A stretch of 43,203 bases of DNA from Octopus bimaculoides (taxonomy: Eukaryota). Location: positions 45,272,285 through 45,315,487 of the forward strand of contig NC_068985.1 in assembly GCF_001194135.2 (NCBI RefSeq), in the 5' to 3' direction. Shown piece after piece: positions 5,581-41,181 of this stretch. Both the position numbers and the translations under genes were made by a program. Under the pieces are notes generated by a model. That model did not search any database. It worked only from the letters and a program-made list of their open reading frames with translations, and was not told the DNA's origin. Position 1 is the first letter of the stretch, and the number at the start of each line of letters is the position of its first letter.

Positions 5581-6339
5581 TTATATGTGCGTTAGTGTAT
5601 TCTTGCGTGATCTTATAATGTTCTTATTTTCTCTGTTTCATTAATATTCGTCGCTTTTCTAAGACAGTAATGTGTGATTTTTAAGGACAGTTGGATGTTA
5701 TTTCAAGCAGTTCAATGGACCATATAAAAGCCCTTCGTTGTTGGTTGAATTAGCAACTGCGTTGTAAATGTAACACAGATATATCATTCGTCTTTTTCAA
5801 TAGTAGTTTTGTCTATAGTCAGATACAGATGAGATTATATGAGTCATATCATAACCGTTATTAAAGTTAATAGTTAAACAATATTATCACTCACGTTAGC
5901 TATTTTATAAGAGTAACAATAATCCATGTTATCAAGTATGTTGTAAATCATATTATCTGAGCCATTCTACACATCTTTATCAGAGCTATGCTACGCTATA
6001 TTTTCAGAGACATGTTAAAACTTATAATCATTGAAATACTAAACCGTAGTATCAGTCATGTCAAACCATAAAAAAGTTATTCTAAATCCTTTTGTCAGAA
6101 ATATGCTAAATCATGTTACCTGTTCAATCATTTTAAAGAGTTGTTTGAAAAGAAATTTTTCGCGGCTTCCCAATTTAATTTTACATGGTAAATAACATAA
6201 TTGGTGTTACTTGCACACTATAAAAAAATCCATTAACAAAAAGATAATGATGTTTAAGTATTTATTTTAAGTAATTATCAGTTTGGAAAATGATTAACAT
6301 TATTGAGCAAGTAAAATTAATTATATAAGTAGCTAAAAA

Positions 6340-6580
6340 AGGCTGTGCAGTAAGACGTTTGCAGACAAACTACATGGTTCCGAGTTGTTCCACCGTGAGA
6401 TACTAAGTGACTTCAACTATAGTGACTCCAACTATAGCCCCAGGGTGCCCAAAGCCTTGTGAATGAATTTGGTAGACAACAAGTAACAAATTACTTGAAC
6501 CAATTTGTACGACTAAACGCTTCAAGGCGGTGCCTCAGTGTGCCGCAAGGAGTGAAACAAGTAAAAAAGATAAAAAATGA
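6340..6580 (+). mobile_element. SINE family B, degraded
   Basis: ggctgtgcagtaag...catggttcc...aaagccttgtgaatgaatttggtagac...ggcggtgcc...tgaaacaagtaaaa resembles 9793-10198. Confidence 0.6.
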
Positions 6581-7093
6581 AAAAGATACCAAAAAATATA
6601 AACTTTCTGACATCTTAAATTATTTCAACATTTGATGCCTGATATACTTCTATAGAGTCTTGATCTTTTGTCCATTTAATGACCTCTAAATTACCAATTA
6701 AAAGAAATGCTCCAATGTTAATTAACTCTAATAACGACCCATTAGTTATTAGTTCGCTCAACCTATTAGAAATTGTAGTTACACATTTCTTCAAGTTAAA
6801 TCTCATCTGTTTTAGACAAAAGACGAGTAGAACCTGATATACGAAGAATATGGTAGCCAAGACAGAAATGCCTTCGATTTTAGGTTTAATTGATCAGAGC
6901 TAACGTGTTGAGGGTAAAAAAGAATGATAAAAATGTCCTATAAATGGCGACAGAAATCAATATTAATATCAAAAAATATTGGCTGAAAAAATATTAAAAT
7001 AATTTAGAAGTGAAAAAATAAAATTCACTGACTGAAGAACAACGATTGTTGATCCATGTTTTACTGACATTACGGGTAATAGAGAACAGAGTT

Positions 7094-8029
7094 TTATAAA
7101 GGAATCCCTTGTTGATATAAGACTGTTTTTATTGACATTCTCAAGCTGTCTATCGGTTCCTCGAGGCATAACTTTTCGATTTCACGTAGTTTATCATAGA
7201 AATACCTCTTTTCCCGATTCGAATGTTCGTAATTACTGGACAACTTTTCCTTTTCTTTCTGAAGATCCCTAACTGCTTGTTCAAGCTCTGCTTTCTCTCG
7301 TAATAAATCAAATCGAACTTCTTTTTGTTCATCTGCTTCTTGTTCGAAGCTGTAAATGCTGTTAATAATCCCGCAATAAGTTTCGTCAGTCTGTGACAAA
7401 GTATCTACCAAATTGGCCTTAGTTAATATGCACACAGCACTTTGTAGCCTTGAAGGAGGAGGAGAATTAGAACTATGATGAGGAGGTGGAAGAGAAGAAG
7501 TAGTAGGAGAGGTAATAGCTGCTCTTTGTTTGATGTACTTTGGCATTCTCTTGGTTTCTGCTGCTAACCTGCATTCTCCTCCGCGTATTTCCTTGGTATT
7601 TCGATCTTTTGATGCTGTTCGGTTGCAGCACATTTGGCGTAGCTGATTTACGTCGTAAGGTTCGCCACTGTAGTTAGCCTCAAAAAAACCCTTAAACCAT
7701 TGTCCAAAATAGTAGTTGGCTTGGAAGTTTCCCCGCATCATATTTTCCATTGGGAAATTCTTTTCTACACCAACAGCATTGAATGCACTTTGGAGCCGTT
7801 TAAAATTATTATGTCTCGAGCTAACACTTAGATTTTTACCGAACCTAATATCAGAAATTTTAATAGAATTAGGAAAAAGTAAAAACATCCCGAAACATAA
7901 ATCGAATCCGCTGCCAAGATCTTCAATGCGTTCAAGTTGAGGGTTAATGTATTGTTGAAGGAAGTCCATCAATTCCTTTTTACTTGTATTTCGGACATTT
8001 GGTAATACTGTAATAGCTTTCCAAGCCAT
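7094..8029 (-). CDS. Intronless divergent EB1/RP-family (MAPRE-like) microtubule end-binding protein, 311 aa
   Basis: N-terminal CH domain aligns by eye with EB1 (IEDLGSG..C..M..LFP.SI; NFK.LQ.AF...GV.K; G.FQ.N..F.QWFK.FF.ANY.G..YD); S/P-rich linker; coiled coil; EBH motif EKRYFYDKLREIEKLC...I..VLY; uninterrupted ATG-to-TAA ORF. Confidence 0.88.
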   Translation of the reverse strand: MAWKAITVLPNVRNTSKKELMDFLQQYINPQLERIEDLGSGFDLCFGMFLLFPNSIKISDIRFGKNLSVSSRHNNFKRLQSAFNAVGVEKNFPMENMMRGNFQANYYFGQWFKGFFEANYSGEPYDVNQLRQMCCNRTASKDRNTKEIRGGECRLAAETKRMPKYIKQRAAITSPTTSSLPPPHHSSNSPPPSRLQSAVCILTKANLVDTLSQTDETYCGIINSIYSFEQEADEQKEVRFDLLREKAELEQAVRDLQKEKEKLSSNYEHSNREKRYFYDKLREIEKLCLEEPIDSLRMSIKTVLYQQGIPL

Positions 8030-9792: not shown

Positions 9793-10198
9793 GGCGCAGG
9801 AGTGGCTGTGTGGTAAGTAGCTTGCTTACCAACCACATGGTTCCGGGTTCAGTCCCACTGCGTGGCACCTTGAGCAAGTGTCTTCTACTATAACCTCGGG
9901 CCGACCAAAGCCTTGTGAGTGGATTTGGTAGACGGAAACTGAAAGAAGCCCGTCATATATATGTATATGTATATATATATATGTGTGTTTGTATGTCTGT
10001 ATTTGTCCCCCCAACATCGCTTGACAACCGATACTGGTGTGTTTGGGTCCCCGTAACTTAGCGGTTCGGCAAAAGAGACCGGTAGAATAAGTACTGGGCT
10101 TACAAAGAATAAGTCCTGGGGTCGATTTGCTCGACTAAAGGCGGTGCTCCAGCATGGCTGCAGTCAAATGACTGAAACAAGTAAAAGAGTAAAAAGAG
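9793..10198 (+). mobile_element. Full-length tRNA-derived CORE-like SINE, family B (Octopus OR-type)
   Basis: ggcgcaggagtggctgtgtggtaag...gggttcagtccc (A/B boxes); ccttgagcaagtg core-like motif; internal (TA/TG)n; tail gtaaaagagtaaaaagag. Confidence 0.85.
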
Positions 10199-11486
10199 TC
10201 AGAGTAACAGACCCTATCAGGTGGTGCTATTAAGTTAGAAATGACCAGGGTCAATCTTTGGCCGAAACATATCTAAGTTTATTTAGTAATTTATTTAGAA
10301 GTACAGAGAGTTGAAAAGAATGGGAGAGATAACAAGGTGACAAAAAACGTACAGTAATGAAAAAGGAGGCACGAAAACGACTGTTTATATCTAATTGTTA
10401 TCAGTATGTTGTCTCCATAATCAGGATACTTAATTCTGATACACCTGACTTGTAAACGAATATCAAACAGCTGCCATTTCGTTGCAGTTGCTGCCATTTC
10501 GTTGCAGTTGCTGCCATTGTTGTTGTTGGTGGTTGTGTTGGTAGTGATGTTCTTGTTTTTTTTTGTTTTTTTTTTGTACAATTGTTTGCATTGCTTATAC
10601 ATTATTATTGGTGTTGTTGGCTTTTTTACTGTACAGGGTGTCCACAAAGTCTGGGCAAATGGGATTAACACATACTTTAAGAAATTATTATTTCTTATAT
10701 TCAATTGTTTATGTCATGATCTTATTTACTCCATGTACCCAGACTTTGTGGGAACAACCTGTAGTTAGTGGTAGAAGAGTTGGGGGTTGGTTTTCTTGTT
10801 GTTGCTGTAGGTGTTGGTGCTGTTGTTATTACTGTTGTTGATGCTGGTTTGGTGGTGCTACAAGAATTGTTGTTATTTTTAGTTTTATTGTTGATGTTGG
10901 GTGTTTTGCTGGTGGTTACTGCACTGGATGGGCTGTTGATCATAGTGGTCGGCGTAGCGTTGATAGTGATGTTACTACAGGTAATACTTGGTGTTAGTGG
11001 TGATAGCGATACTACAGCTAGTGATATTGTATACGCCCCTTCCTGATTAAACTGACCAATGATATATAATCAAAGGTAATTTCCGAGGCATTATCCATCT
11101 AATATTATATTATACAACGTGATGCTAACATCATTTTTATGACTCAATGGAAATTTGACTGTTATTTCTAGTAGATGAAACAACCGCGTATAGGTCGTCT
11201 GATGAAGGCAAAATTAAGAAACATTTCTTGTATTATTTATCAAATATTGATTTTATATTTTGGTAAGATAATGTCAAGAATTTGAAGATACGAGCTTGTG
11301 ATAAGGAATAGACTCAGGACATTGGTGTTATTTGCAATAGTAGTTCTAGAAAAATTGATGCCCATGTTGTTTGTCAGTAAGATTTGCACAAGGAACTTCG
11401 TAAATTACTGAACCCAACACCTGCAATGCGTATAAGTTTGAGGAATTATGTGATCCATCGAGTAGAATTATACATTATTTCTTTTT

Positions 11487-13400: not shown

Positions 13401-14391
13401 CTGCAGTACTTTAGCTGCTTTCAGTACTTGAGAACTGAGTGACTGTCATAACATAGATCACATCACCTCGAAAAACAAGCGGAGAGTCATTGTAATGACA
13501 TCGTTATAAACTTCGCAATATTACTTTTTATATGGAGGTTGCTGGAGTTAATTAATCAATAATAGTGTATGTCAATGCATTAAAAGTATATAAGTTAGTT
13601 ACTGAATGTCCTGAGTTCAAATCATACCGAAGGTAGATTTTGGATTTACGTATCAGGTATTGATGTGATAGCAGTAATATACTATGTACAGGACCATACA
13701 TTATAGCTCCATACTATCTATCTATCTATCTATCTAGATAGATAGATAGATAGATAGGTAGGTAGATAGATTATTTTTGAAGGACAGAGGTAATTGTGAC
13801 TTTGAAGGTTCAGCTTATTTTCTTTTTCTCTGACAGTGTATCGAAGGTTGCTGAGCCGAAATTTTATCGACAGTGTTTATTTTATTATTTTATTTATTCC
13901 GAAAGGATAAAAAAACGTGGTGTGTCCAAAGCCGTTTTAGCGACATTGTAAGTACTCGGGAAAATAAATATACTCTGCCACATAGTATTTATTTATTGGC
14001 ACCAAGGTAAAGCATACACAGATCTGTATCGGTTATCAGGACCCATGACGACCCTGGGCAACTGCGCAGTGTGCCTCTACTTGAAGAAGGCATTAGGTAT
14101 ACCTAATTAAAATTTTGAACTCAGAGTAATGTGTGACGTAACGAAATGCAACAAGATATTTTCTCCTGTTTAGACACAAGTTGTTTTCTCTCCGCATATT
14201 TTACCGCTACAAAAAACGGCCTCTGCCTCCCTGAACTACCTAAGTGCATGCCAACTCCACAGTTTCCAACCCTGTTCCTGTATTTCCTGTTCTTTATTCG
14301 CAGTGAACATTAAGCCTTAACACAATTCCTCTATCGAAAAATAACACTCTGGAATTCTCTCAGAGTCATGCTTTTCCATGATTTTCTACTT

Positions 14392-14799
14392 CAGGAGTGG
14401 CTGTGTGGTAAGTAGCTTGCCTACCAGCCACATAGTTCCGGGTTCAGTCCCAATGCGTGGCACCTTGGGCAAGTATCTTCTACTATAGCCTCGGGCCGAC
14501 CAAAGCCTTGTGAGAGGATTTGGTAGACGGAAACTGAAAGAAGCCCGTCGTATATATGTATATGTATATATATGTGTGTGTGTGTGTGTTTGTGTGTTTG
14601 TGTTTGTCCCCCCAACATCGCTTGACAACCGATACTGGTGTGTTTGAGTCCCTGTAACTTAGCGGTTCGGCAAAATAGACCGATAGAATAAGTACTGGGC
14701 TTACAAAGAATAAGTACTGGGGTCGATTTGCTCGACTAAAGGCGATGCTCCAGCATGGCCGCAATCAAATGACTGAAACAAGTAAAAGAGTAAAAAGAA
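14392..14799 (+). mobile_element. SINE family B, near full length
   Basis: Near-identical to 9793-10198. Confidence 0.88.
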
Positions 14800-14939
14800 T
14801 AACATCCGTAAGAATCTCACAGCTGAAAGAATCTGTAAAGCGGATAAGTATTGCCCTTTTCTCAAACGTCAACCCGCTTTGAAATCACAACCCAGTTTGT
14901 TTTCATTAGTTACAAGCAAAAAGAATATGATGGACATCT

Positions 14940-15146
14940 TTTATGTTTTACTTGTTTCATTCGTTGGACTGTAGCCATGCTGGGGCTCCGACTTGGAGAA
15001 TTTTTTTTATCGAATATAATAACCTCCGTACTTATTTTTATATAGCCTGATACTTATTTATTCTATCAGGCTCTTTTGCTGTACCGCTAGGTCACAGGGG
15101 CGTACACCCACGCTTCAGTTCTCAAGTGGTGGTGAGCAACAATCAA

Positions 15147-15177
<31 letters not shown>

Positions 15178-15332
15178 CGACAGGCTTCTTTCAGTTACCG
15201 TCTACTAAATACACTGAAAACGTTTTGGTCGGCCCGAGGTCATAGTAGAAGACACTTACCCAAGGTGCCACACAATGGGGCTGAACCTGGAACCATGTGG
15301 TTAGGAAGCAAACTTCTTACCACACGGCCACA
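14940..15332 (-). mobile_element. SINE family B, older copy, inverted relative to 14392-14799
   Basis: Reverse complement gives tggccgtgtggtaagaag...ggttccaggttcagcccc...ccttgggtaagtgtcttctac... and ...gaaacaagtaaaa. Confidence 0.75.
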
Positions 15333-18219: not shown

Positions 18220-19036
18220 TATTGGGTTGAGGAATAATTCATGAGCGTTTATTTTTTAAAATTTATTTTAAAAAAAAAAGCTACAACAAATTAATCAATA
18301 ATATATTCTTCGTTGATGTTTACGACTTCCTCCTATCGTTCAATAAGATTTTCGATGACTCCGCGTTAGAAATTTACCGTCTTGACTCAAAGGATTCGTC
18401 CAACCAAGCCCTCAACACCACATCATTATTGAATGATTCGAAAGAGGTCGAAAGAGATGAAAATCTGAACGCGCCAAATCCGGAGAGTATGGAGGATGAG
18501 GCAGCACTTCCTATTCGAGCTCTTGAATCGCTGCTTTGGTCATATTGCCGACTTGAACCTTGCCCATTGAGTGAAGGCGGTTCACTAGAGTATTTTGTCT
18601 TTTTGTCACAATCCATCTGTTCCGCCAATTCTCTGGTCATTTGACATGCATTTTCATGATGGAGTTTATTCAAAATCTCTTCATCGAACTCAATTGGTCG
18701 ACCGGTGTGTGATCCGTTCTTGAATTCAAAATTCCCATTTTTGAAGCACGAAAGCCAAGGTCCGTTGTACTTTGAGGCATTGTTCCTTCTCCATACACAG
18801 CACAAATCTCACGAGCAGCTTCGGCAGCCTTAACATCTCAATTAAATGCAAAAAACAAATGGTGTCGAAAATTCCCAGTTTTGTCCACTTGATATTCCAT
18901 TTTAATGATCTGAAAATACGCGAAAATCAATAAAACAGATGTTCTTTTAAAGCATTTTGCCAATGCGTTTTATTTCTGCATGCATTTATAAAATTTGAAA
19001 ACAAACGCACATTGAATTATTCTTCAGCCCAATTTA
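18220..19036 (-). mobile_element. Internally deleted mariner DNA transposon with both TIRs
   Basis: Left tattgggttgaggaataattcatgagcg and right (reverse complement) taaattgggctgaagaataattcaatgtgcg, TA-flanked; remnants W...FKNGNF.F.N....GRP.EFD...TRELA (HTH) and F..FNN...L..WLDE.F.S; catalytic DDD region absent. Confidence 0.85.
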
Positions 19037-20365: not shown

Positions 20366-20896
<531 letters not shown>

Positions 20897-21922: not shown

Positions 21923-22748
21923 NNNNNNNNNNNNNNNNNNNNNNNNNNNNNNNNNNNNNNNNNNNNNNNNNNNNNNNNNNNNNNNNNNNNNNNNNNNNNN
22001 NNNNNNNNNNNNNNNNNNNNNNNNNNNNNNNNNNNNNNNNNNNNNNNNNNNNNNNNNNNNNNNNNNNNNNNNNNNNNNNNNNNNNNNNNNNNNNNNNNNN
22101 NNNNNNNNNNNNNNNNNNNNNNNNNNNNNNNNNNNNNNNNNNNNNNNNNNNNNNNNNNNNNNNNNNNNNNNNNNNNNNNNNNNNNNNNNNNNNNNNNNNN
22201 NNNNNNNNNNNNNNNNNNNNNNNNNNNNNNNNNNNNNNNNNNNNNNNNNNNNNNNNNNNNNNNNNNNNNNNNNNNNNNNNNNNNNNNNNNNNNNNNNNNN
22301 NNNNNNNNNNNNNNNNNNNNNNNNNNNNNNNNNNNNNNNNNNNNNNNNNNNNNNNNNNNNNNNNNNNNNNNNNNNNNNNNNNNNNNNNNNNNNNNNNNNN
22401 NNNNNNNNNNNNNNNNNNNNNNNNNNNNNNNNNNNNNNNNNNNNNNNNNNNNNNNNNNNNNNNNNNNNNNNNNNNNNNNNNNNNNNNNNNNNNNNNNNNN
22501 NNNNNNNNNNNNNNNNNNNNNNNNNNNNNNNNNNNNNNNNNNNNNNNNNNNNNNNNNNNNNNNNNNNNNNNNNNNNNNNNNNNNNNNNNNNNNNNNNNNN
22601 NNNNNNNNNNNNNNNNNNNNNNNNNNNNNNNNNNNNNNNNNNNNNNNNNNNNNNNNNNNNNNNNNNNNNNNNNNNNNNNNNNNNNNNNNNNNNNNNNNNN
22701 NNNNNNNNNNNNNNNNNNNNNNNNNNNNNNNNNNNNNNNNNNNNNNNN
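21923..22748. other. Assembly gap (others: 20505-20738, 26575-27313, 28135-28962, 34571-34673, 35338-35654, 36835-37348, 40525-40828)
   Basis: N-runs, mostly bordered by simple repeats. Confidence 0.99.
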
Positions 22749-26501: not shown

Positions 26502-27313
26502 TATCACCGTTACCACGATTTCGTTATTTCCATGACAGGGACCATAATCATCATTTTGATTAACATTAACACTCNNNNNNNNNNNNNNNNNNNNNNNNNN
26601 NNNNNNNNNNNNNNNNNNNNNNNNNNNNNNNNNNNNNNNNNNNNNNNNNNNNNNNNNNNNNNNNNNNNNNNNNNNNNNNNNNNNNNNNNNNNNNNNNNNN
26701 NNNNNNNNNNNNNNNNNNNNNNNNNNNNNNNNNNNNNNNNNNNNNNNNNNNNNNNNNNNNNNNNNNNNNNNNNNNNNNNNNNNNNNNNNNNNNNNNNNNN
26801 NNNNNNNNNNNNNNNNNNNNNNNNNNNNNNNNNNNNNNNNNNNNNNNNNNNNNNNNNNNNNNNNNNNNNNNNNNNNNNNNNNNNNNNNNNNNNNNNNNNN
26901 NNNNNNNNNNNNNNNNNNNNNNNNNNNNNNNNNNNNNNNNNNNNNNNNNNNNNNNNNNNNNNNNNNNNNNNNNNNNNNNNNNNNNNNNNNNNNNNNNNNN
27001 NNNNNNNNNNNNNNNNNNNNNNNNNNNNNNNNNNNNNNNNNNNNNNNNNNNNNNNNNNNNNNNNNNNNNNNNNNNNNNNNNNNNNNNNNNNNNNNNNNNN
27101 NNNNNNNNNNNNNNNNNNNNNNNNNNNNNNNNNNNNNNNNNNNNNNNNNNNNNNNNNNNNNNNNNNNNNNNNNNNNNNNNNNNNNNNNNNNNNNNNNNNN
27201 NNNNNNNNNNNNNNNNNNNNNNNNNNNNNNNNNNNNNNNNNNNNNNNNNNNNNNNNNNNNNNNNNNNNNNNNNNNNNNNNNNNNNNNNNNNNNNNNNNNN
27301 NNNNNNNNNNNNN

Positions 27314-28134: not shown

Positions 28135-28962
28135 NNNNNNNNNNNNNNNNNNNNNNNNNNNNNNNNNNNNNNNNNNNNNNNNNNNNNNNNNNNNNNNNNN
28201 NNNNNNNNNNNNNNNNNNNNNNNNNNNNNNNNNNNNNNNNNNNNNNNNNNNNNNNNNNNNNNNNNNNNNNNNNNNNNNNNNNNNNNNNNNNNNNNNNNNN
28301 NNNNNNNNNNNNNNNNNNNNNNNNNNNNNNNNNNNNNNNNNNNNNNNNNNNNNNNNNNNNNNNNNNNNNNNNNNNNNNNNNNNNNNNNNNNNNNNNNNNN
28401 NNNNNNNNNNNNNNNNNNNNNNNNNNNNNNNNNNNNNNNNNNNNNNNNNNNNNNNNNNNNNNNNNNNNNNNNNNNNNNNNNNNNNNNNNNNNNNNNNNNN
28501 NNNNNNNNNNNNNNNNNNNNNNNNNNNNNNNNNNNNNNNNNNNNNNNNNNNNNNNNNNNNNNNNNNNNNNNNNNNNNNNNNNNNNNNNNNNNNNNNNNNN
28601 NNNNNNNNNNNNNNNNNNNNNNNNNNNNNNNNNNNNNNNNNNNNNNNNNNNNNNNNNNNNNNNNNNNNNNNNNNNNNNNNNNNNNNNNNNNNNNNNNNNN
28701 NNNNNNNNNNNNNNNNNNNNNNNNNNNNNNNNNNNNNNNNNNNNNNNNNNNNNNNNNNNNNNNNNNNNNNNNNNNNNNNNNNNNNNNNNNNNNNNNNNNN
28801 NNNNNNNNNNNNNNNNNNNNNNNNNNNNNNNNNNNNNNNNNNNNNNNNNNNNNNNNNNNNNNNNNNNNNNNNNNNNNNNNNNNNNNNNNNNNNNNNNNNN
28901 NNNNNNNNNNNNNNNNNNNNNNNNNNNNNNNNNNNNNNNNNNNNNNNNNNNNNNNNNNNNNN

Positions 28963-34570: not shown

Positions 34571-34761
34571 NNNNNNNNNNNNNNNNNNNNNNNNNNNNNN
34601 NNNNNNNNNNNNNNNNNNNNNNNNNNNNNNNNNNNNNNNNNNNNNNNNNNNNNNNNNNNNNNNNNNNNNNNNNNTATGTATGCGCACAAACATATTTCTG
34701 TTCAGATAGGTGCAAATATATCTGTATATATTTACATTTTAGCTTATACATACACGCACTC

Positions 34762-34998: not shown

Positions 34999-35654
34999 TA
35001 ATAATAATAATGATAATAATATTAAAAACAATGATAATAATAATAACAAAAGATGGTCGCTTTGTTCAGTCTGCAAGAATGGGCCTGTCTGCCTGCTTGT
35101 GTCTCCTCTGTTAAATTACTATTGTTGCTAGTCATTTAGTGTTCCCCACTCGCACTCTACTCTATCACGAACCTGAAGGTTTCTACAATAAGGGGAATAC
35201 GACATGAATTGCTTATTCTTTAGTCACATTATTGCCAATAAAGCAATAATAGTGTTTCTTCATTTTTTTACATCTGTCTGAGGACATATATTCATACATA
35301 CATATATATAAATGTATAATATATATATATATATATANNNNNNNNNNNNNNNNNNNNNNNNNNNNNNNNNNNNNNNNNNNNNNNNNNNNNNNNNNNNNNN
35401 NNNNNNNNNNNNNNNNNNNNNNNNNNNNNNNNNNNNNNNNNNNNNNNNNNNNNNNNNNNNNNNNNNNNNNNNNNNNNNNNNNNNNNNNNNNNNNNNNNNN
35501 NNNNNNNNNNNNNNNNNNNNNNNNNNNNNNNNNNNNNNNNNNNNNNNNNNNNNNNNNNNNNNNNNNNNNNNNNNNNNNNNNNNNNNNNNNNNNNNNNNNN
35601 NNNNNNNNNNNNNNNNNNNNNNNNNNNNNNNNNNNNNNNNNNNNNNNNNNNNNN

Positions 35655-36710: not shown

Positions 36711-37348
36711 TACATATAGGCATGTGTGTGTGCGTGCGTATGCGTGCGTGTGTGTGGAGGTGTACGTGTGCGTGGTGTACGTATATACTTAAACTATATT
36801 TGCGTTTATTCTTATAAAAATAAACAAAATTATANNNNNNNNNNNNNNNNNNNNNNNNNNNNNNNNNNNNNNNNNNNNNNNNNNNNNNNNNNNNNNNNNN
36901 NNNNNNNNNNNNNNNNNNNNNNNNNNNNNNNNNNNNNNNNNNNNNNNNNNNNNNNNNNNNNNNNNNNNNNNNNNNNNNNNNNNNNNNNNNNNNNNNNNNN
37001 NNNNNNNNNNNNNNNNNNNNNNNNNNNNNNNNNNNNNNNNNNNNNNNNNNNNNNNNNNNNNNNNNNNNNNNNNNNNNNNNNNNNNNNNNNNNNNNNNNNN
37101 NNNNNNNNNNNNNNNNNNNNNNNNNNNNNNNNNNNNNNNNNNNNNNNNNNNNNNNNNNNNNNNNNNNNNNNNNNNNNNNNNNNNNNNNNNNNNNNNNNNN
37201 NNNNNNNNNNNNNNNNNNNNNNNNNNNNNNNNNNNNNNNNNNNNNNNNNNNNNNNNNNNNNNNNNNNNNNNNNNNNNNNNNNNNNNNNNNNNNNNNNNNN
37301 NNNNNNNNNNNNNNNNNNNNNNNNNNNNNNNNNNNNNNNNNNNNNNNA

Positions 37349-40260: not shown

Positions 40261-41181
40261 GCACAGGAATACTTTTCAATATTATTCTTTTTATACATCA
40301 GAAACCGCAACCGTTAACTTTTACATGTCTTTTGAATTTGGCAATTTCAATTCTGTTGATATTAATTCTAAAATTATTTTCGTCAATGCCTGTGATCCAG
40401 TGATTTTTCAATTGTTTGATGTTGTAGCACACTGGAGATTAAATAAAATATCATTCATATAATTCACAAGAAATGTTTTGAGAAAACTGTTTTAAAGCTG
40501 AAACTTTAGAAATATGGACACACANNNNNNNNNNNNNNNNNNNNNNNNNNNNNNNNNNNNNNNNNNNNNNNNNNNNNNNNNNNNNNNNNNNNNNNNNNNN
40601 NNNNNNNNNNNNNNNNNNNNNNNNNNNNNNNNNNNNNNNNNNNNNNNNNNNNNNNNNNNNNNNNNNNNNNNNNNNNNNNNNNNNNNNNNNNNNNNNNNNN
40701 NNNNNNNNNNNNNNNNNNNNNNNNNNNNNNNNNNNNNNNNNNNNNNNNNNNNNNNNNNNNNNNNNNNNNNNNNNNNNNNNNNNNNNNNNNNNNNNNNNNN
40801 NNNNNNNNNNNNNNNNNNNNNNNNNNNNTATATATATATATATATATATATCAATAAATATAATATATATTTTTTATGTACTACTATTAGTTTCATGTGC
40901 TGAGACCATGCCAAACAATGTTTATAAAGACGTCTGATGTCATAGCACATTCATCAGGCACTGCCAACATGGCATAAGGAACTAAAAATAATACTGTGCT
41001 GATAGGATGAGAGAAAAAGCGAGAAAAAGTGTGAATGAAGTAGATATAAAAGTCCTAAGATTGATAAACGAGAAAATGGAAAAGAAAGCAGGAAAATGCA
41101 AATGGGAAAAATTGGAGTTATTTCTCCTTATTTTTTGTTGCTCGCCTTGTTTCAATAATCATACTTTTTGTCTCTGAATAG

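What the first reader, a model, noticed from the sequence alone, without database searches (positions are those of the whole stretch)
7094..8029. Intact, intronless, strongly diverged EB1 paralog (candidate retrogene)
Seen: an uninterrupted 311-codon ORF with CH domain, linker, coiled coil and EBH motif, sitting among TE debris. Established: metazoan EB1/MAPRE genes normally have introns and highly conserved CH domains, and Drosophila has divergent testis-biased EB1 paralogs. Inference: this is a retroposed, fast-evolving copy kept open by selection, possibly for sperm manchette or flagellum function.
Basis: partly seen in the sequence, partly recalled or inferred. Interest (0 to 1): 0.7.

Follow-up and report, generated by a model that had tools for sequence, protein, structure and literature searches.

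The report
Single-exon, divergent EB1-like gene in octopus
This is a real, selectively maintained, intron-free octopus gene for a strongly diverged relative of the microtubule-tip protein EB1. It belongs to a larger cephalopod-only family of such intron-free EB1-like genes that nobody appears to have described, so it is an old family member rather than a recent retrocopy.

Summary
Window 7094-8029 (minus strand) is an uninterrupted 311-codon ORF. It encodes an EB-type CH domain, a disordered linker, a long coiled coil and an EB1-homology motif. It lacks the acidic EEY tail.

The window is Octopus bimaculoides. Intact, collinear orthologues exist in O. vulgaris, another Octopus species and Argonauta hians. 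dN/dS is 0.10-0.26 overall and 0.06-0.09 in the CH domain, so the ORF is kept by purifying selection.

The gene is not an isolated young retrocopy. It sits in a monophyletic clade of divergent EB1-like genes (100% bootstrap in an NJ tree) whose named members are all cephalopods (Octopus, Argonauta, Sepia). All eight loci I inspected have a contiguous coding region without introns. A canonical molluscan EB1 from a bivalve is spread over 30.6 kb in at least 5 coding exons.

The best reading is one ancient retroposition in the cephalopod stem, followed by family expansion. No poly(A) remnant survives, and I could not retrieve the canonical octopus parent.

The proposed sperm function is untested. 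The Drosophila EB family is a close precedent: Mst27D is a testis-specific retrogene.

In passing, I found a conserved VDxx[S/T/A]QTD motif in front of the coiled coil that resembles a binding site for dynein light chain LC8.

The parts
7094..8029 (-). Complete single-exon coding sequence, 311 codons plus a TAA stop, of a divergent EB1-like (RP/EB family) protein.
   Evidence: ORF list. An identical product is called as a 936-nt single-exon gene in O. bimaculoides GCA_001194135.2. Orthologous intact ORFs are shown.
7634..7993 (-). EB-type calponin-homology (CH) domain, aa 13-132, the presumed microtubule-binding module.
   Evidence: phmmer against PDB gives EB1 2r8u at E=2e-24. AF2 pLDDT is about 90. 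Foldseek top 15 hits are all EB1/EB3/Mal3/Bim1 CH domains, rmsd 1.3-1.5 A for the crystal structures. dN/dS is 0.06-0.09.
7415..7633 (-). Disordered Ser/Pro-rich basic linker, aa 133-205. It contains a GG at aa 150-151 that is invariant across the subfamily.
   Evidence: AF2 pLDDT is below 50 for aa 138-193. dN/dS is 0.4-1.5. Alignment A2.
7382..7408 (-). Conserved linear motif VDTLSQTDE, aa 208-216, immediately before the coiled coil. It is a candidate binding site for LC8/DYNLL.
   Evidence: S-Q-T is invariant in all 9 subfamily sequences. [ST]QT[DEG] is present in 8 of 17 family representatives; [ST]QT[DE] is present in 1 of 226 canonical EB1s. LC8 motif rules come from PMC6607443. The binding itself is untested.
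7160..7390 (-). Long alpha-helix, aa 214-290, the predicted dimerising coiled coil.
   Evidence: AF2 predicts helix 214-290 with pLDDT 78-96. dN/dS of the coiled-coil plus EBH region is 0.04-0.39.
7115..7216 (-). EB1-homology (EBH) motif, aa 272-305, the presumed docking site for SxIP partners.
   Evidence: Pfam PF03271 scores 27.2 bits against a cut-off of 27. It aligns to human EB1 EKERDFYFGKLRNIELIC...ILY, with K280, L281, R282, I284, E285, C288, L304 and Y305 identical. F277, K280, L281, I284, E285, C288, L304 and Y305 are invariant in the subfamily.
7004..7093 (-). First ~90 nt after the stop codon, nearly identical in three Octopus species. This is a probable 3'UTR element.
   Evidence: Three-way alignment. 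The flanks overall are only 86-92% identical.
6885..6890 (-). ATTAAA, a candidate polyadenylation signal about 206 nt after the stop, conserved in the three Octopus species.
   Evidence: Its function is not shown.

Best explanation
Window 7094-8029 (minus strand) is a functional, single-exon gene of Octopus bimaculoides. It encodes a divergent member of the RP/EB (EB1/MAPRE) family.

Protein architecture:
- An EB-type CH domain. The residues equivalent to human EB1 K89 and Q102 are retained.
- A disordered basic linker.
- An unusually long coiled coil.
- An EBH motif whose pocket residues are largely conserved.
- No acidic EEY/F tail.

Inferred mechanism: the protein forms a coiled-coil dimer that binds microtubules through its two CH domains and can dock SxIP-type partners on the EBH bundle. 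It cannot recruit CAP-Gly proteins (CLIP-170, p150Glued) and lacks the tail's auto-inhibition.

Evolution: the gene is conserved at the same locus in Octopus species and is present in Argonauta, all under purifying selection. It is one branch of a monophyletic family of divergent EB1-like genes whose named members are all cephalopods, and every member inspected is intronless. The most economical origin (inferred, not shown) is a single ancient retroposition of a spliced EB1 mRNA in the cephalopod stem lineage, followed by duplication and divergence of the copies. The tissue and cellular role are unknown.
For: Gene and domains:
- ORF and domain matches.
- AF2 model and Foldseek hits to EB1/EB3 CH domains, rmsd 1.3-1.5 A.
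- Source genome and single-exon gene call.

Orthology and constraint:
- The O. vulgaris locus is collinear over about 13 kb of flanks at 80-93% identity and carries an intact 313-codon ORF.
- An intact ORF is present in another Octopus species (L004/L005) and in Argonauta (L001).
- NG86 dN/dS is 0.26, 0.16 and 0.21 among the three Octopus species and about 0.10 against Argonauta. It is 0.06-0.09 in the CH domain and 0.4-1.5 in the linker.
- The ORF is 96.0% identical to O. vulgaris against 91-92% for the flanks, and ORF indels are only multiples of 3.
- Against Argonauta only the ORF is still alignable.

Family:
- The representative search returned about 13 distinct 50%-identity clusters of the divergent type.
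- Source names are Argonauta hians, O. vulgaris and Sepia pharaonis.
- In the NJ tree of CH domains the divergent clade has 100% bootstrap, and the subfamily containing the window gene has 84%.

Intron status:
- Coding region equals gene span, or is contiguous in genomic DNA, for the window gene, O. vulgaris paralogue P0009, Argonauta P0002 and P0012, Sepia P0155, and ENA contigs P0004 and P0010.
- The canonical bivalve EB1 P0258 is 284 aa over 30.6 kb, with at least 5 coding exons mapped and introns inside the CH domain.

Other:
- No EEY tail; full-length pI is 8.7 against about 5.1 for canonical EB1.
- Precedent for lineage-specific and retroposed EB paralogues in Drosophila.
Against: - No retroposition hallmark survives. 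There is no A-rich tract within 800 nt after the stop, and target-site duplications were not searched for.
- The canonical, intron-containing EB1 of an octopus was not retrieved. The last homologue search returned mostly arthropods. 'Parent with introns' therefore rests on a bivalve and on general knowledge.
- The Pfam EBH hit only just reaches the curated threshold (27.2 against 27).
- Several basic CH-domain residues of human EB1 are replaced: K59, K60 and K100 become S, D and N (alignment). Plus-end tracking rather than lattice binding cannot be assumed. Drosophila Mst27D, a similar divergent paralogue, decorates the lattice.
- There is no expression evidence. The Logan contigs end in microsatellites and are genomic.
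- The O. vulgaris annotation splices through the ORF. I read this as a mis-model, but without RNA data I cannot exclude real splicing.
Confidence: 0.75

Rival explanations
1. It is a recent, Octopus-specific processed retrocopy of the housekeeping EB1 gene. This covers both a young retrogene, and a decaying processed pseudogene that happens still to be open.
For: The ORF is intronless and surrounded by interspersed repeats.
Against: Orthologues are at the same locus in O. vulgaris and present in Argonauta, and subfamily members occur in cuttlefish. The CH domain is only 38% identical to canonical EB1. dN/dS is 0.10-0.26, with frame-preserving indels only. No poly(A) remnant is present.
Confidence: 0.03
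2. The family did not arise by retroposition. An ordinary DNA duplicate of EB1 lost its introns gradually, or the ancestral cephalopod EB1 was already intron-poor, and the intronless state was then inherited by all duplicates.
For: There is no poly(A) tract, no target-site duplication and no identified parent. Once a copy is intronless, DNA duplication and repeated retroposition give the same picture. Members lie on different chromosomes and scaffolds.
Against: All eight loci examined lack every coding intron, while a canonical molluscan EB1 has at least 5 coding exons, including introns inside the CH domain. Simultaneous loss of all introns is the signature of a reverse-transcribed mRNA (general knowledge). 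No family member with a partial intron set was seen.
Confidence: 0.17
3. Retrogene replacement: cephalopods lost the canonical EB1, and this intronless family now supplies all EB function.
Against: The failure is explained by the search tools. These have a word-index prefilter, 50%-identity representatives and only 120 rows listed. The family proteins lack the EEY tail and are only 36-41% identical to canonical CH domains, whereas canonical EB1 is 77% conserved between phyla. From memory, unverified here, NCBI annotates ordinary MAPRE genes in octopus.
Confidence: 0.04

Closest known systems
Canonical EB1/MAPRE1 (human EB1, EB3; bivalve EB1 P0258)
   Same: The domain order is the same: EB-type CH domain, disordered linker, coiled coil, EBH motif. 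The CH fold superposes at 1.3-1.5 A. The equivalents of K89 and Q102, and the EBH residues K220, L221, R222, I224, E225, C228, L246 and Y247, are identical.
   Different: The CH domain is only 38% identical, against 77% among canonical EB1s. There is no acidic EEY/F tail, so no CAP-Gly docking is expected. The protein is basic overall (pI 8.7 against about 5). The coiled-coil helix is much longer, about 77 residues. The gene has a single exon, against at least 5 coding exons. It carries a conserved xQTD motif that canonical EB1s lack.
Drosophila Mst27D and the other tissue-restricted EB paralogues (CG15306, CG32371, CG2955, EB-SUN/CG18190)
   Same: These are lineage-specific, divergent EB-family paralogues that exist alongside a ubiquitous EB1. 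Mst27D is reported to have arisen by retroposition. It keeps a CH domain and a coiled coil, has lost canonical C-terminal features, and forms homodimers (PMC10359004; bioRxiv 10.1101/2024.09.11.612465).
   Different: The origin is independent and in a different phylum. The octopus protein retains a recognisable EBH motif, whereas Mst27D resembles EB1 essentially only in the CH domain. Gonad-specific expression, lattice binding and Nup358 linkage are shown for the fly proteins and are unknown for the octopus gene. The cephalopod family is larger: about 13 clusters at 50% identity, some with tandem CH domains or coiled coils of about 400-450 residues.
Processed retrogenes in general (for example amphioxus SYCP1, teleost intron-less opsins)
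   Same: It is a single-exon copy of a normally multi-exon gene, retained under selection (PMC5803294 and PMC10339062, listed).
   Different: It is ancient. The poly(A) tract is absent, target-site duplications were not looked for, and the copy has itself founded a gene family.

Membership tests
RP/EB (EB1/MAPRE) family | N-terminal EB-type calponin-homology domain | tested here: met
   phmmer against EB1/EB3 structures gives E=2e-24 to 5e-17. The AF2 model superposes on the CH-domain crystal structures 1vka, 2r8u, 1pa7 and 2qjz at rmsd 1.3-1.5 A (1.7 A for 3co1) with TM 0.80-0.92. Non-EB CH domains score only E>0.2.
RP/EB (EB1/MAPRE) family | Microtubule-contact residues of the CH domain (human EB1 K89, Q102 and surrounding basic residues; the list is recalled from memory) | tested here: inconclusive
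   The alignment shows that K89 and Q102 are kept (window K90 and Q103, both invariant in the subfamily). K59, K60 and K100 are S, D and N.
RP/EB (EB1/MAPRE) family | Coiled coil that dimerises the protein | not testable with these tools
   AF2 predicts a continuous helix at 214-290 with high confidence. Oligomeric state cannot be predicted with the single-chain tool.
RP/EB (EB1/MAPRE) family | EB1-homology (EBH) C-terminal motif, Pfam PF03271 | tested here: met
   It scores 27.2 bits against a gathering cut-off of 27, so the pass is marginal. Key positions are invariant in the subfamily.
RP/EB (EB1/MAPRE) family | Acidic C-terminal EEY/F tail that binds CAP-Gly domains | tested here: not met
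   The protein ends ...LYQQGIPL. The orthologues end the same way (YQQGIPL/YHQGIPL), the cuttlefish-type relatives end LYEEGLPM, and P0004/P0005 end LYADLDE/Q. Canonical proteins end ...EEY.
RP/EB (EB1/MAPRE) family | Autonomous tracking of growing microtubule plus ends | not testable with these tools
   This needs live imaging or in vitro reconstitution. The divergent fly paralogue Mst27D binds the lattice instead.
Processed retrogene | Lacks all introns of the parental gene's coding region | tested here: met
   The ORF is uninterrupted in the window and in seven related loci. Canonical bivalve EB1 has at least 5 coding exons over 30.6 kb. The octopus parent itself was not examined.
Processed retrogene | Remnant of a poly(A) tail at the 3' end | tested here: not met
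   There is no A-rich tract in the 800 nt after the stop in any of three Octopus species. This is expected if the event is hundreds of millions of years old.
Processed retrogene | Flanking target-site duplications | not tested
   I judged this uninformative at this age. The flanks are saturated even between Octopus and Argonauta.
Processed retrogene | An identifiable multi-exon parent gene elsewhere in the same genome | not testable with these tools
   The capped protein searches returned no canonical cephalopod EB1, and no tool here searches the octopus genome directly.
LC8/DYNLL client (considered only as a hypothesis) | An 8-residue motif in a disordered region, anchored by T-Q-T, with an H-bonding residue (often Asp) at -4 and P/D/E at +2 (PMC6607443) | tested here: inconclusive
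   Window VDTLSQTDE has D at -4, S (not T) at -1, Q at 0, T at +1 and D at +2. It lies in a region with pLDDT below 50, next to the coiled coil. Leu at -2 is a bulky hydrophobic residue, which the paper lists as unfavourable. Paralogue P0012 has VDGLTQTDK, with a full TQT anchor. No binding prediction or assay was run.

The most novel reading that the evidence does not exclude
Coleoid cephalopods evolved a new subclass of EB proteins from one retroposed EB1 copy. The subclass has about a dozen intronless paralogues, some with tandem CH domains or very long coiled coils. These proteins lost the EEY tail that links canonical EB1 to CAP-Gly proteins such as dynactin p150. Many of them gained instead a conserved D-x-x-[S/T/A]-Q-T-[D/E] site for dynein light chain LC8 directly in front of the coiled coil. 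Under this reading they couple to, or are clamped into dimers by, LC8. That would be a rewired link between microtubule-binding EB modules and the dynein/LC8 hub, possibly serving cephalopod-specific neuronal or spermatid microtubule arrays.
Probability: 0.2. Interest if true: 0.65.

Novelty: new member of a known kind. Interest (0 to 1): 0.45.

Why it matters
EB proteins are the master adaptors of growing microtubule ends and are among the most conserved cytoskeletal proteins. Lineage-specific, highly diverged EB paralogues are so far characterised mainly in Drosophila. One of those, Mst27D, turned out to build a specialised spermatid microtubule structure.

This analysis shows that the octopus ORF is one member of a constrained, monophyletic family of intronless EB-like genes known so far only from cephalopods. 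I found no paper that analyses this family. The only mention was a MAPRE1 label inside the giant-squid Hox region.

The family adds a cytoskeletal gene expansion to the known cephalopod expansions. It also gives a clean natural experiment on which EB features are dispensable (the EEY tail) and which are kept (the CH core, the EBH pocket). It is nonetheless a new example of a known phenomenon, not a new kind of system.

Tried and rejected
1. Finding the canonical octopus EB1 parent. The first search with the window protein returned only close relatives, because of the word prefilter. The profile search was swamped by coiled-coil candidates. The third search, with a canonical query of unknown origin, listed mostly arthropods and no cephalopod.

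2. Expression evidence from public short contigs. Logan contigs L004-L009 carry the ORF, but they are collinear with genomic DNA and end in microsatellites, so they are genomic and not mRNA. The run accessions do not appear in any paper.

3. TE protein domains near the gene. Five flanking ORFs gave no Pfam hit. The ORF at 18374-18805, which looked like a mariner-type helix-turn-helix by eye, is not supported.

4. Conserved neighbouring genes for synteny with Argonauta or Sepia. tblastx found nothing conserved except the ORF itself.

5. Tandem copies. tblastn of 17 family and canonical proteins finds only one EB-like locus in the window and in each related locus.

6. Retroposition scars. No poly(A) remnant was found.

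8. The O. vulgaris gene model P0003 spans 27 kb, has an unrelated N-terminus and exits the ORF early. I rejected it as a mis-prediction, because an intact full-length ORF lies at L002 13951-14892.
Full report
**Observation**

The window holds an ATG-to-TAA ORF of 311 codons at 7094-8029 on the minus strand. It is the only long ORF in the 43 kb that is not an artefact of N-runs or microsatellites. An exact-sequence look-up places it in Octopus bimaculoides assembly GCA_001194135.2, chromosome CM046605.1 at about 45.28 Mb. There the same 936-nt stretch is called as a single-exon gene.

**What the protein is**

- Residues 13-132 match the CH domain of human EB1 and EB3 (phmmer E=2e-24 to 5e-17, about 38% identity).
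- An AlphaFold2 model built on an alignment of relatives gives pLDDT about 90 for this domain.
- Foldseek's best 15 PDB hits are all EB1, EB3, Mal3 or Bim1 CH domains. The crystal structures superpose at rmsd 1.3-1.5 A with TM 0.80-0.92. Other CH domains (parvin, fimbrin, SPEF1) score only E>0.2.
- Pfam's EB1 C-terminal motif (PF03271) hits residues 272-305 at 27.2 bits, just above its cut-off of 27.
- The residue alignment to human EB1 (EKERDFYFGKLRNIELIC...ILY against NREKRYFYDKLREIEKLC...VLY) keeps K, L, R, I, E, C, L and Y at the positions that line the partner-binding pocket. The role of these residues is recalled from the EB1 literature.
- Between the two domains, the model shows a disordered Ser/Pro-rich linker (138-215, pLDDT below 50). 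This is followed by one long helix (214-290) and a short return helix (293-306), the layout of an EB coiled coil plus EBH bundle.
- The protein ends ...LYQQGIPL and has no acidic EEY/F tail. Its overall pI is 8.7, against about 5.1 for canonical EB1.

**Degree of divergence**

The CH domain is 38% identical to canonical EB1 from a bivalve or a vertebrate. Those canonical proteins are 77% identical to each other and to an insect and an annelid EB1.

**Conservation and selection**

- The O. vulgaris locus (L002) is collinear with the window over about 13 kb at 80-93% identity. It contains an intact 313-codon ORF at 13951-14892.
- The deposited O. vulgaris gene model (P0003) spans 27 kb, begins in an unrelated upstream exon and leaves the ORF early. 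I regard it as a mis-prediction.
- A third Octopus species (Logan contigs L004/L005) and Argonauta hians (L001) also carry intact ORFs of 312 and 305 codons.

Nei-Gojobori dN/dS:

| Comparison | dN/dS | Fisher p |
|---|---|---|
| Window vs O. vulgaris | 0.26 | 8e-5 |
| Window vs third Octopus | 0.16 | 9e-11 |
| Octopus vs Argonauta (dS saturated, pS about 0.7 vs pN about 0.19) | about 0.10 | 1e-37 to 1e-42 |

By region, the CH domain is at 0.06-0.09. The coiled coil plus EBH is at 0.04-0.13, with 0.39 in the closest pair where counts are small. The linker is at 0.4-1.5.

At the DNA level the ORF is 96.0% identical to O. vulgaris, against 92.4% and 91.0% for the 5' and 3' flanks. Its only indels are 6 and 3 columns, while the flanks carry many. 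Against Argonauta only the ORF can still be aligned. The gene is therefore maintained by purifying selection. It diverged strongly in the past but is not evolving fast now.

**A family, not a lone copy**

An exhaustive HMMER scan of 1.84 billion representative proteins gave a graded series of relatives far better than canonical EB1s (E=1e-63 to 1e-25, against about 1e-20 for canonical). These share a signature that canonical EB proteins lack:

- G-[TS]-G-x-[DE]-[FL]-C-x-G-M in place of GAAYCQFMD;
- N-[FY]-[YF]-F-G-x-W-F-K-x-F-F-E-A-N-Y in place of QDNFEFVQWFKKFFDANY.

Every member that carries a source name is a cephalopod: Argonauta hians (four proteins), O. vulgaris and Sepia (Acanthosepion) pharaonis.

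In a neighbour-joining tree of CH domains the divergent clade is separated from canonical, fungal and protist EB1s in 100% of 200 bootstraps. The window gene groups with its octopod orthologues (98-100%). These in turn group with two other lineages, the Sepia-type P0007/P0008 and P0004/P0005, at 84%.

Other branches include:
- proteins with two tandem CH domains (P0006, P0160);
- proteins with coiled coils of about 400-450 residues (P0012, 695 aa; P0015, 559 aa).

**Intron status**

For every family locus I could fetch, the coding region is contiguous in genomic DNA:

- the window gene;
- the O. vulgaris orthologue;
- O. vulgaris paralogue P0009, on another chromosome (1110 nt for 369 aa);
- Argonauta P0002 (918 nt for 305 aa);
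- Argonauta P0012 (2088 nt for 695 aa);
- Sepia P0155 (942 nt for 313 aa);
- ENA contig P0004;
- ENA contig P0010, which has one frameshift but no intron.

By contrast, the canonical EB1 of the bivalve Sinanodonta woodiana (P0258, 284 aa, ending EDEEY) spans 30.6 kb. tblastn maps at least five separate coding exons, with exon boundaries inside the CH domain at about aa 41, 53 and 89.

Loss of every intron in a whole clade is most simply explained by one reverse-transcribed mRNA copy at the base of the clade, followed by expansion. This is an inference:
- no poly(A) remnant is present;
- I did not look for target-site duplications;
- I could not retrieve the canonical octopus gene with the capped searches.

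The alternative is ordinary duplication with later complete intron loss, or an already intronless ancestor. I give that about 0.17.

**Mechanism (inferred)**

By homology with EB1, the protein should form a parallel coiled-coil dimer that presents two CH domains to the microtubule. The equivalents of human K89 and Q102 are kept and are invariant in the subfamily, but K59, K60 and K100 are not. The conserved EBH pocket suggests it still docks SxIP-type partners. The missing EEY tail means it cannot recruit CAP-Gly proteins and lacks tail-mediated auto-inhibition.

Whether it tracks growing ends or decorates the lattice cannot be told from sequence. The Drosophila retrogene Mst27D, a comparably diverged EB paralogue, binds and bundles the lattice and links nuclear pores to spermatid microtubules (PMC10359004). 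EB-SUN/CG18190 still tracks plus ends and is ovary-enriched (bioRxiv 10.1101/2024.09.11.612465).

No expression information was reachable. The short public contigs carrying the gene end in microsatellites and are genomic.

**A motif noticed on the way**

Directly before the coiled coil lies VDTLSQTDE (aa 208-216).

- It is identical from Octopus to Argonauta, although it sits at the end of the fast-evolving linker.
- S-Q-T is invariant in all nine subfamily sequences.
- Related forms occur in other branches: VDGLTQTDK in P0012, VDVASQTDQ in P0160 and VDNVAQTDK in P0025.
- [ST]QT[DEG] is present in 8 of 17 family representatives; [ST]QT[DE] is present in 1 of 226 canonical EB1s.

The pattern fits the published rules for LC8/DYNLL recognition (PMC6607443):
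- Asp at -4;
- a small hydroxyl residue at -1;
- Gln at 0;
- Thr at +1;
- Asp/Glu at +2;
- location in a disordered segment next to a coiled coil.

Two things count against it: Ser rather than Thr at -1, and a bulky Leu at -2. I record this as a hypothesis with about 0.2-0.3 probability.

**Surroundings**

- The gene is flanked by multi-copy interspersed repeats. A roughly 400-bp element at window 9797-10207 and 14392-14797 has more than ten copies in 47 kb of the O. vulgaris locus. A roughly 170-230-bp element recurs at least seven times in the window.
- A tRNA-like SINE remnant lies at the end of the conserved 3' flank.
- The window also has many microsatellites and eight N-gaps.
- No flanking ORF has a transposon protein domain.
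- The first 90 nt after the stop are almost invariant among three Octopus species. A conserved ATTAAA lies 206 nt downstream of the stop.

**Novelty and verdict**

Automated annotation already labels the orthologues 'RP/EB family member 1-like'. The type of event, a lineage-specific divergent EB paralogue that may have arisen by retroposition, is known from Drosophila. I found no paper that analyses cephalopod EB-like genes. The only trace is a 'MAPRE1' label among non-Hox genes inside the giant-squid Hox region (PMC6962438).

I therefore rate this as a new member of a known kind, with moderate interest (0.45). The family-level picture and the possible LC8 site are the parts worth following up.

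Noticed in passing
window 7382-7408 (minus strand), aa 208-216: The conserved motif VDTLSQTDE sits just before the coiled coil. S-Q-T is invariant in the subfamily, and related D-x-x-[S/T/A]-Q-T-D forms occur in other family branches. It resembles an LC8/DYNLL recognition motif.
   Followed up: partly
L002 10001-37110 (O. vulgaris OX597818.1): The deposited O. vulgaris gene model (P0003, 299 aa) is a chimera. It has an unrelated first exon about 3.9 kb upstream, then part of the EB-like ORF, then a distant last exon. The intact 313-codon ORF at L002 13951-14892 is not annotated as such.
   Followed up: yes
window 7004-7093 and 6885-6890 (minus strand): The first ~90 nt of the 3' flank are nearly identical in three Octopus species, which is more conserved than the synonymous sites of the ORF. 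A conserved ATTAAA lies about 206 nt after the stop. This may be a regulatory 3'UTR element plus a poly(A) signal.
   Followed up: partly
proteins P0006 (Argonauta), P0160/P0010, P0012 (Argonauta, L012), P0015: Other members of the cephalopod EB-like clade have unusual architectures. P0006 and P0160 have two tandem CH domains. P0012 (695 aa) and P0015 (559 aa) have very long coiled coils. P0015 still ends in an EBH-like 'LYFKQLVKIEKAC' motif.
   Followed up: partly
L011 10897-10984 (ENA ERZ21867824 ctg112704l): The P0010 locus is the counterpart of the 488-aa P0160, but it is split into two overlapping ORFs by a frameshift. This is either an assembly error in a long-read contig or a pseudogenised copy.
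   Followed up: partly
window 9797-10207, 14392-14797, 14937-15331 and others; L002 many sites: A roughly 400-bp interspersed repeat, probably a SINE, has several copies in the window and more than ten in 47 kb of the O. vulgaris locus. A second element of about 170-230 bp recurs at least seven times in the window.
   Followed up: no
window about 6309-6480 (minus strand): The end of the conserved 3' flank contains a segment with tRNA-like arms (GGTTCCGAGTT...CCACCGTGAGA on the opposite strand) ending in a T/A run. It is probably an old tRNA-derived SINE. O. vulgaris has an extra 1-kb repeat insertion right after it.
   Followed up: no
window 18374-18805 (minus strand): A 143-aa ORF looked by eye like the helix-turn-helix N-terminus of a mariner-type transposase, but it gave no Pfam hit at E<=0.01.
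   Followed up: partly
window 20505-20738, 21923-22748, 26575-27313, 28135-28962, 34571-34674, 35338-35654, 36835-37347, 40525-40828: Eight runs of N (assembly gaps), mostly bordered by microsatellites (TA, CA/TG, poly-purine). They produce long spurious 'ORFs' of X.
   Followed up: no
literature: PMC6962438 (giant squid genome): A gene labelled MAPRE1 is drawn among the non-Hox genes inside the Architeuthis dux Hox region. It might be another member of this dispersed intronless family.
   Followed up: no
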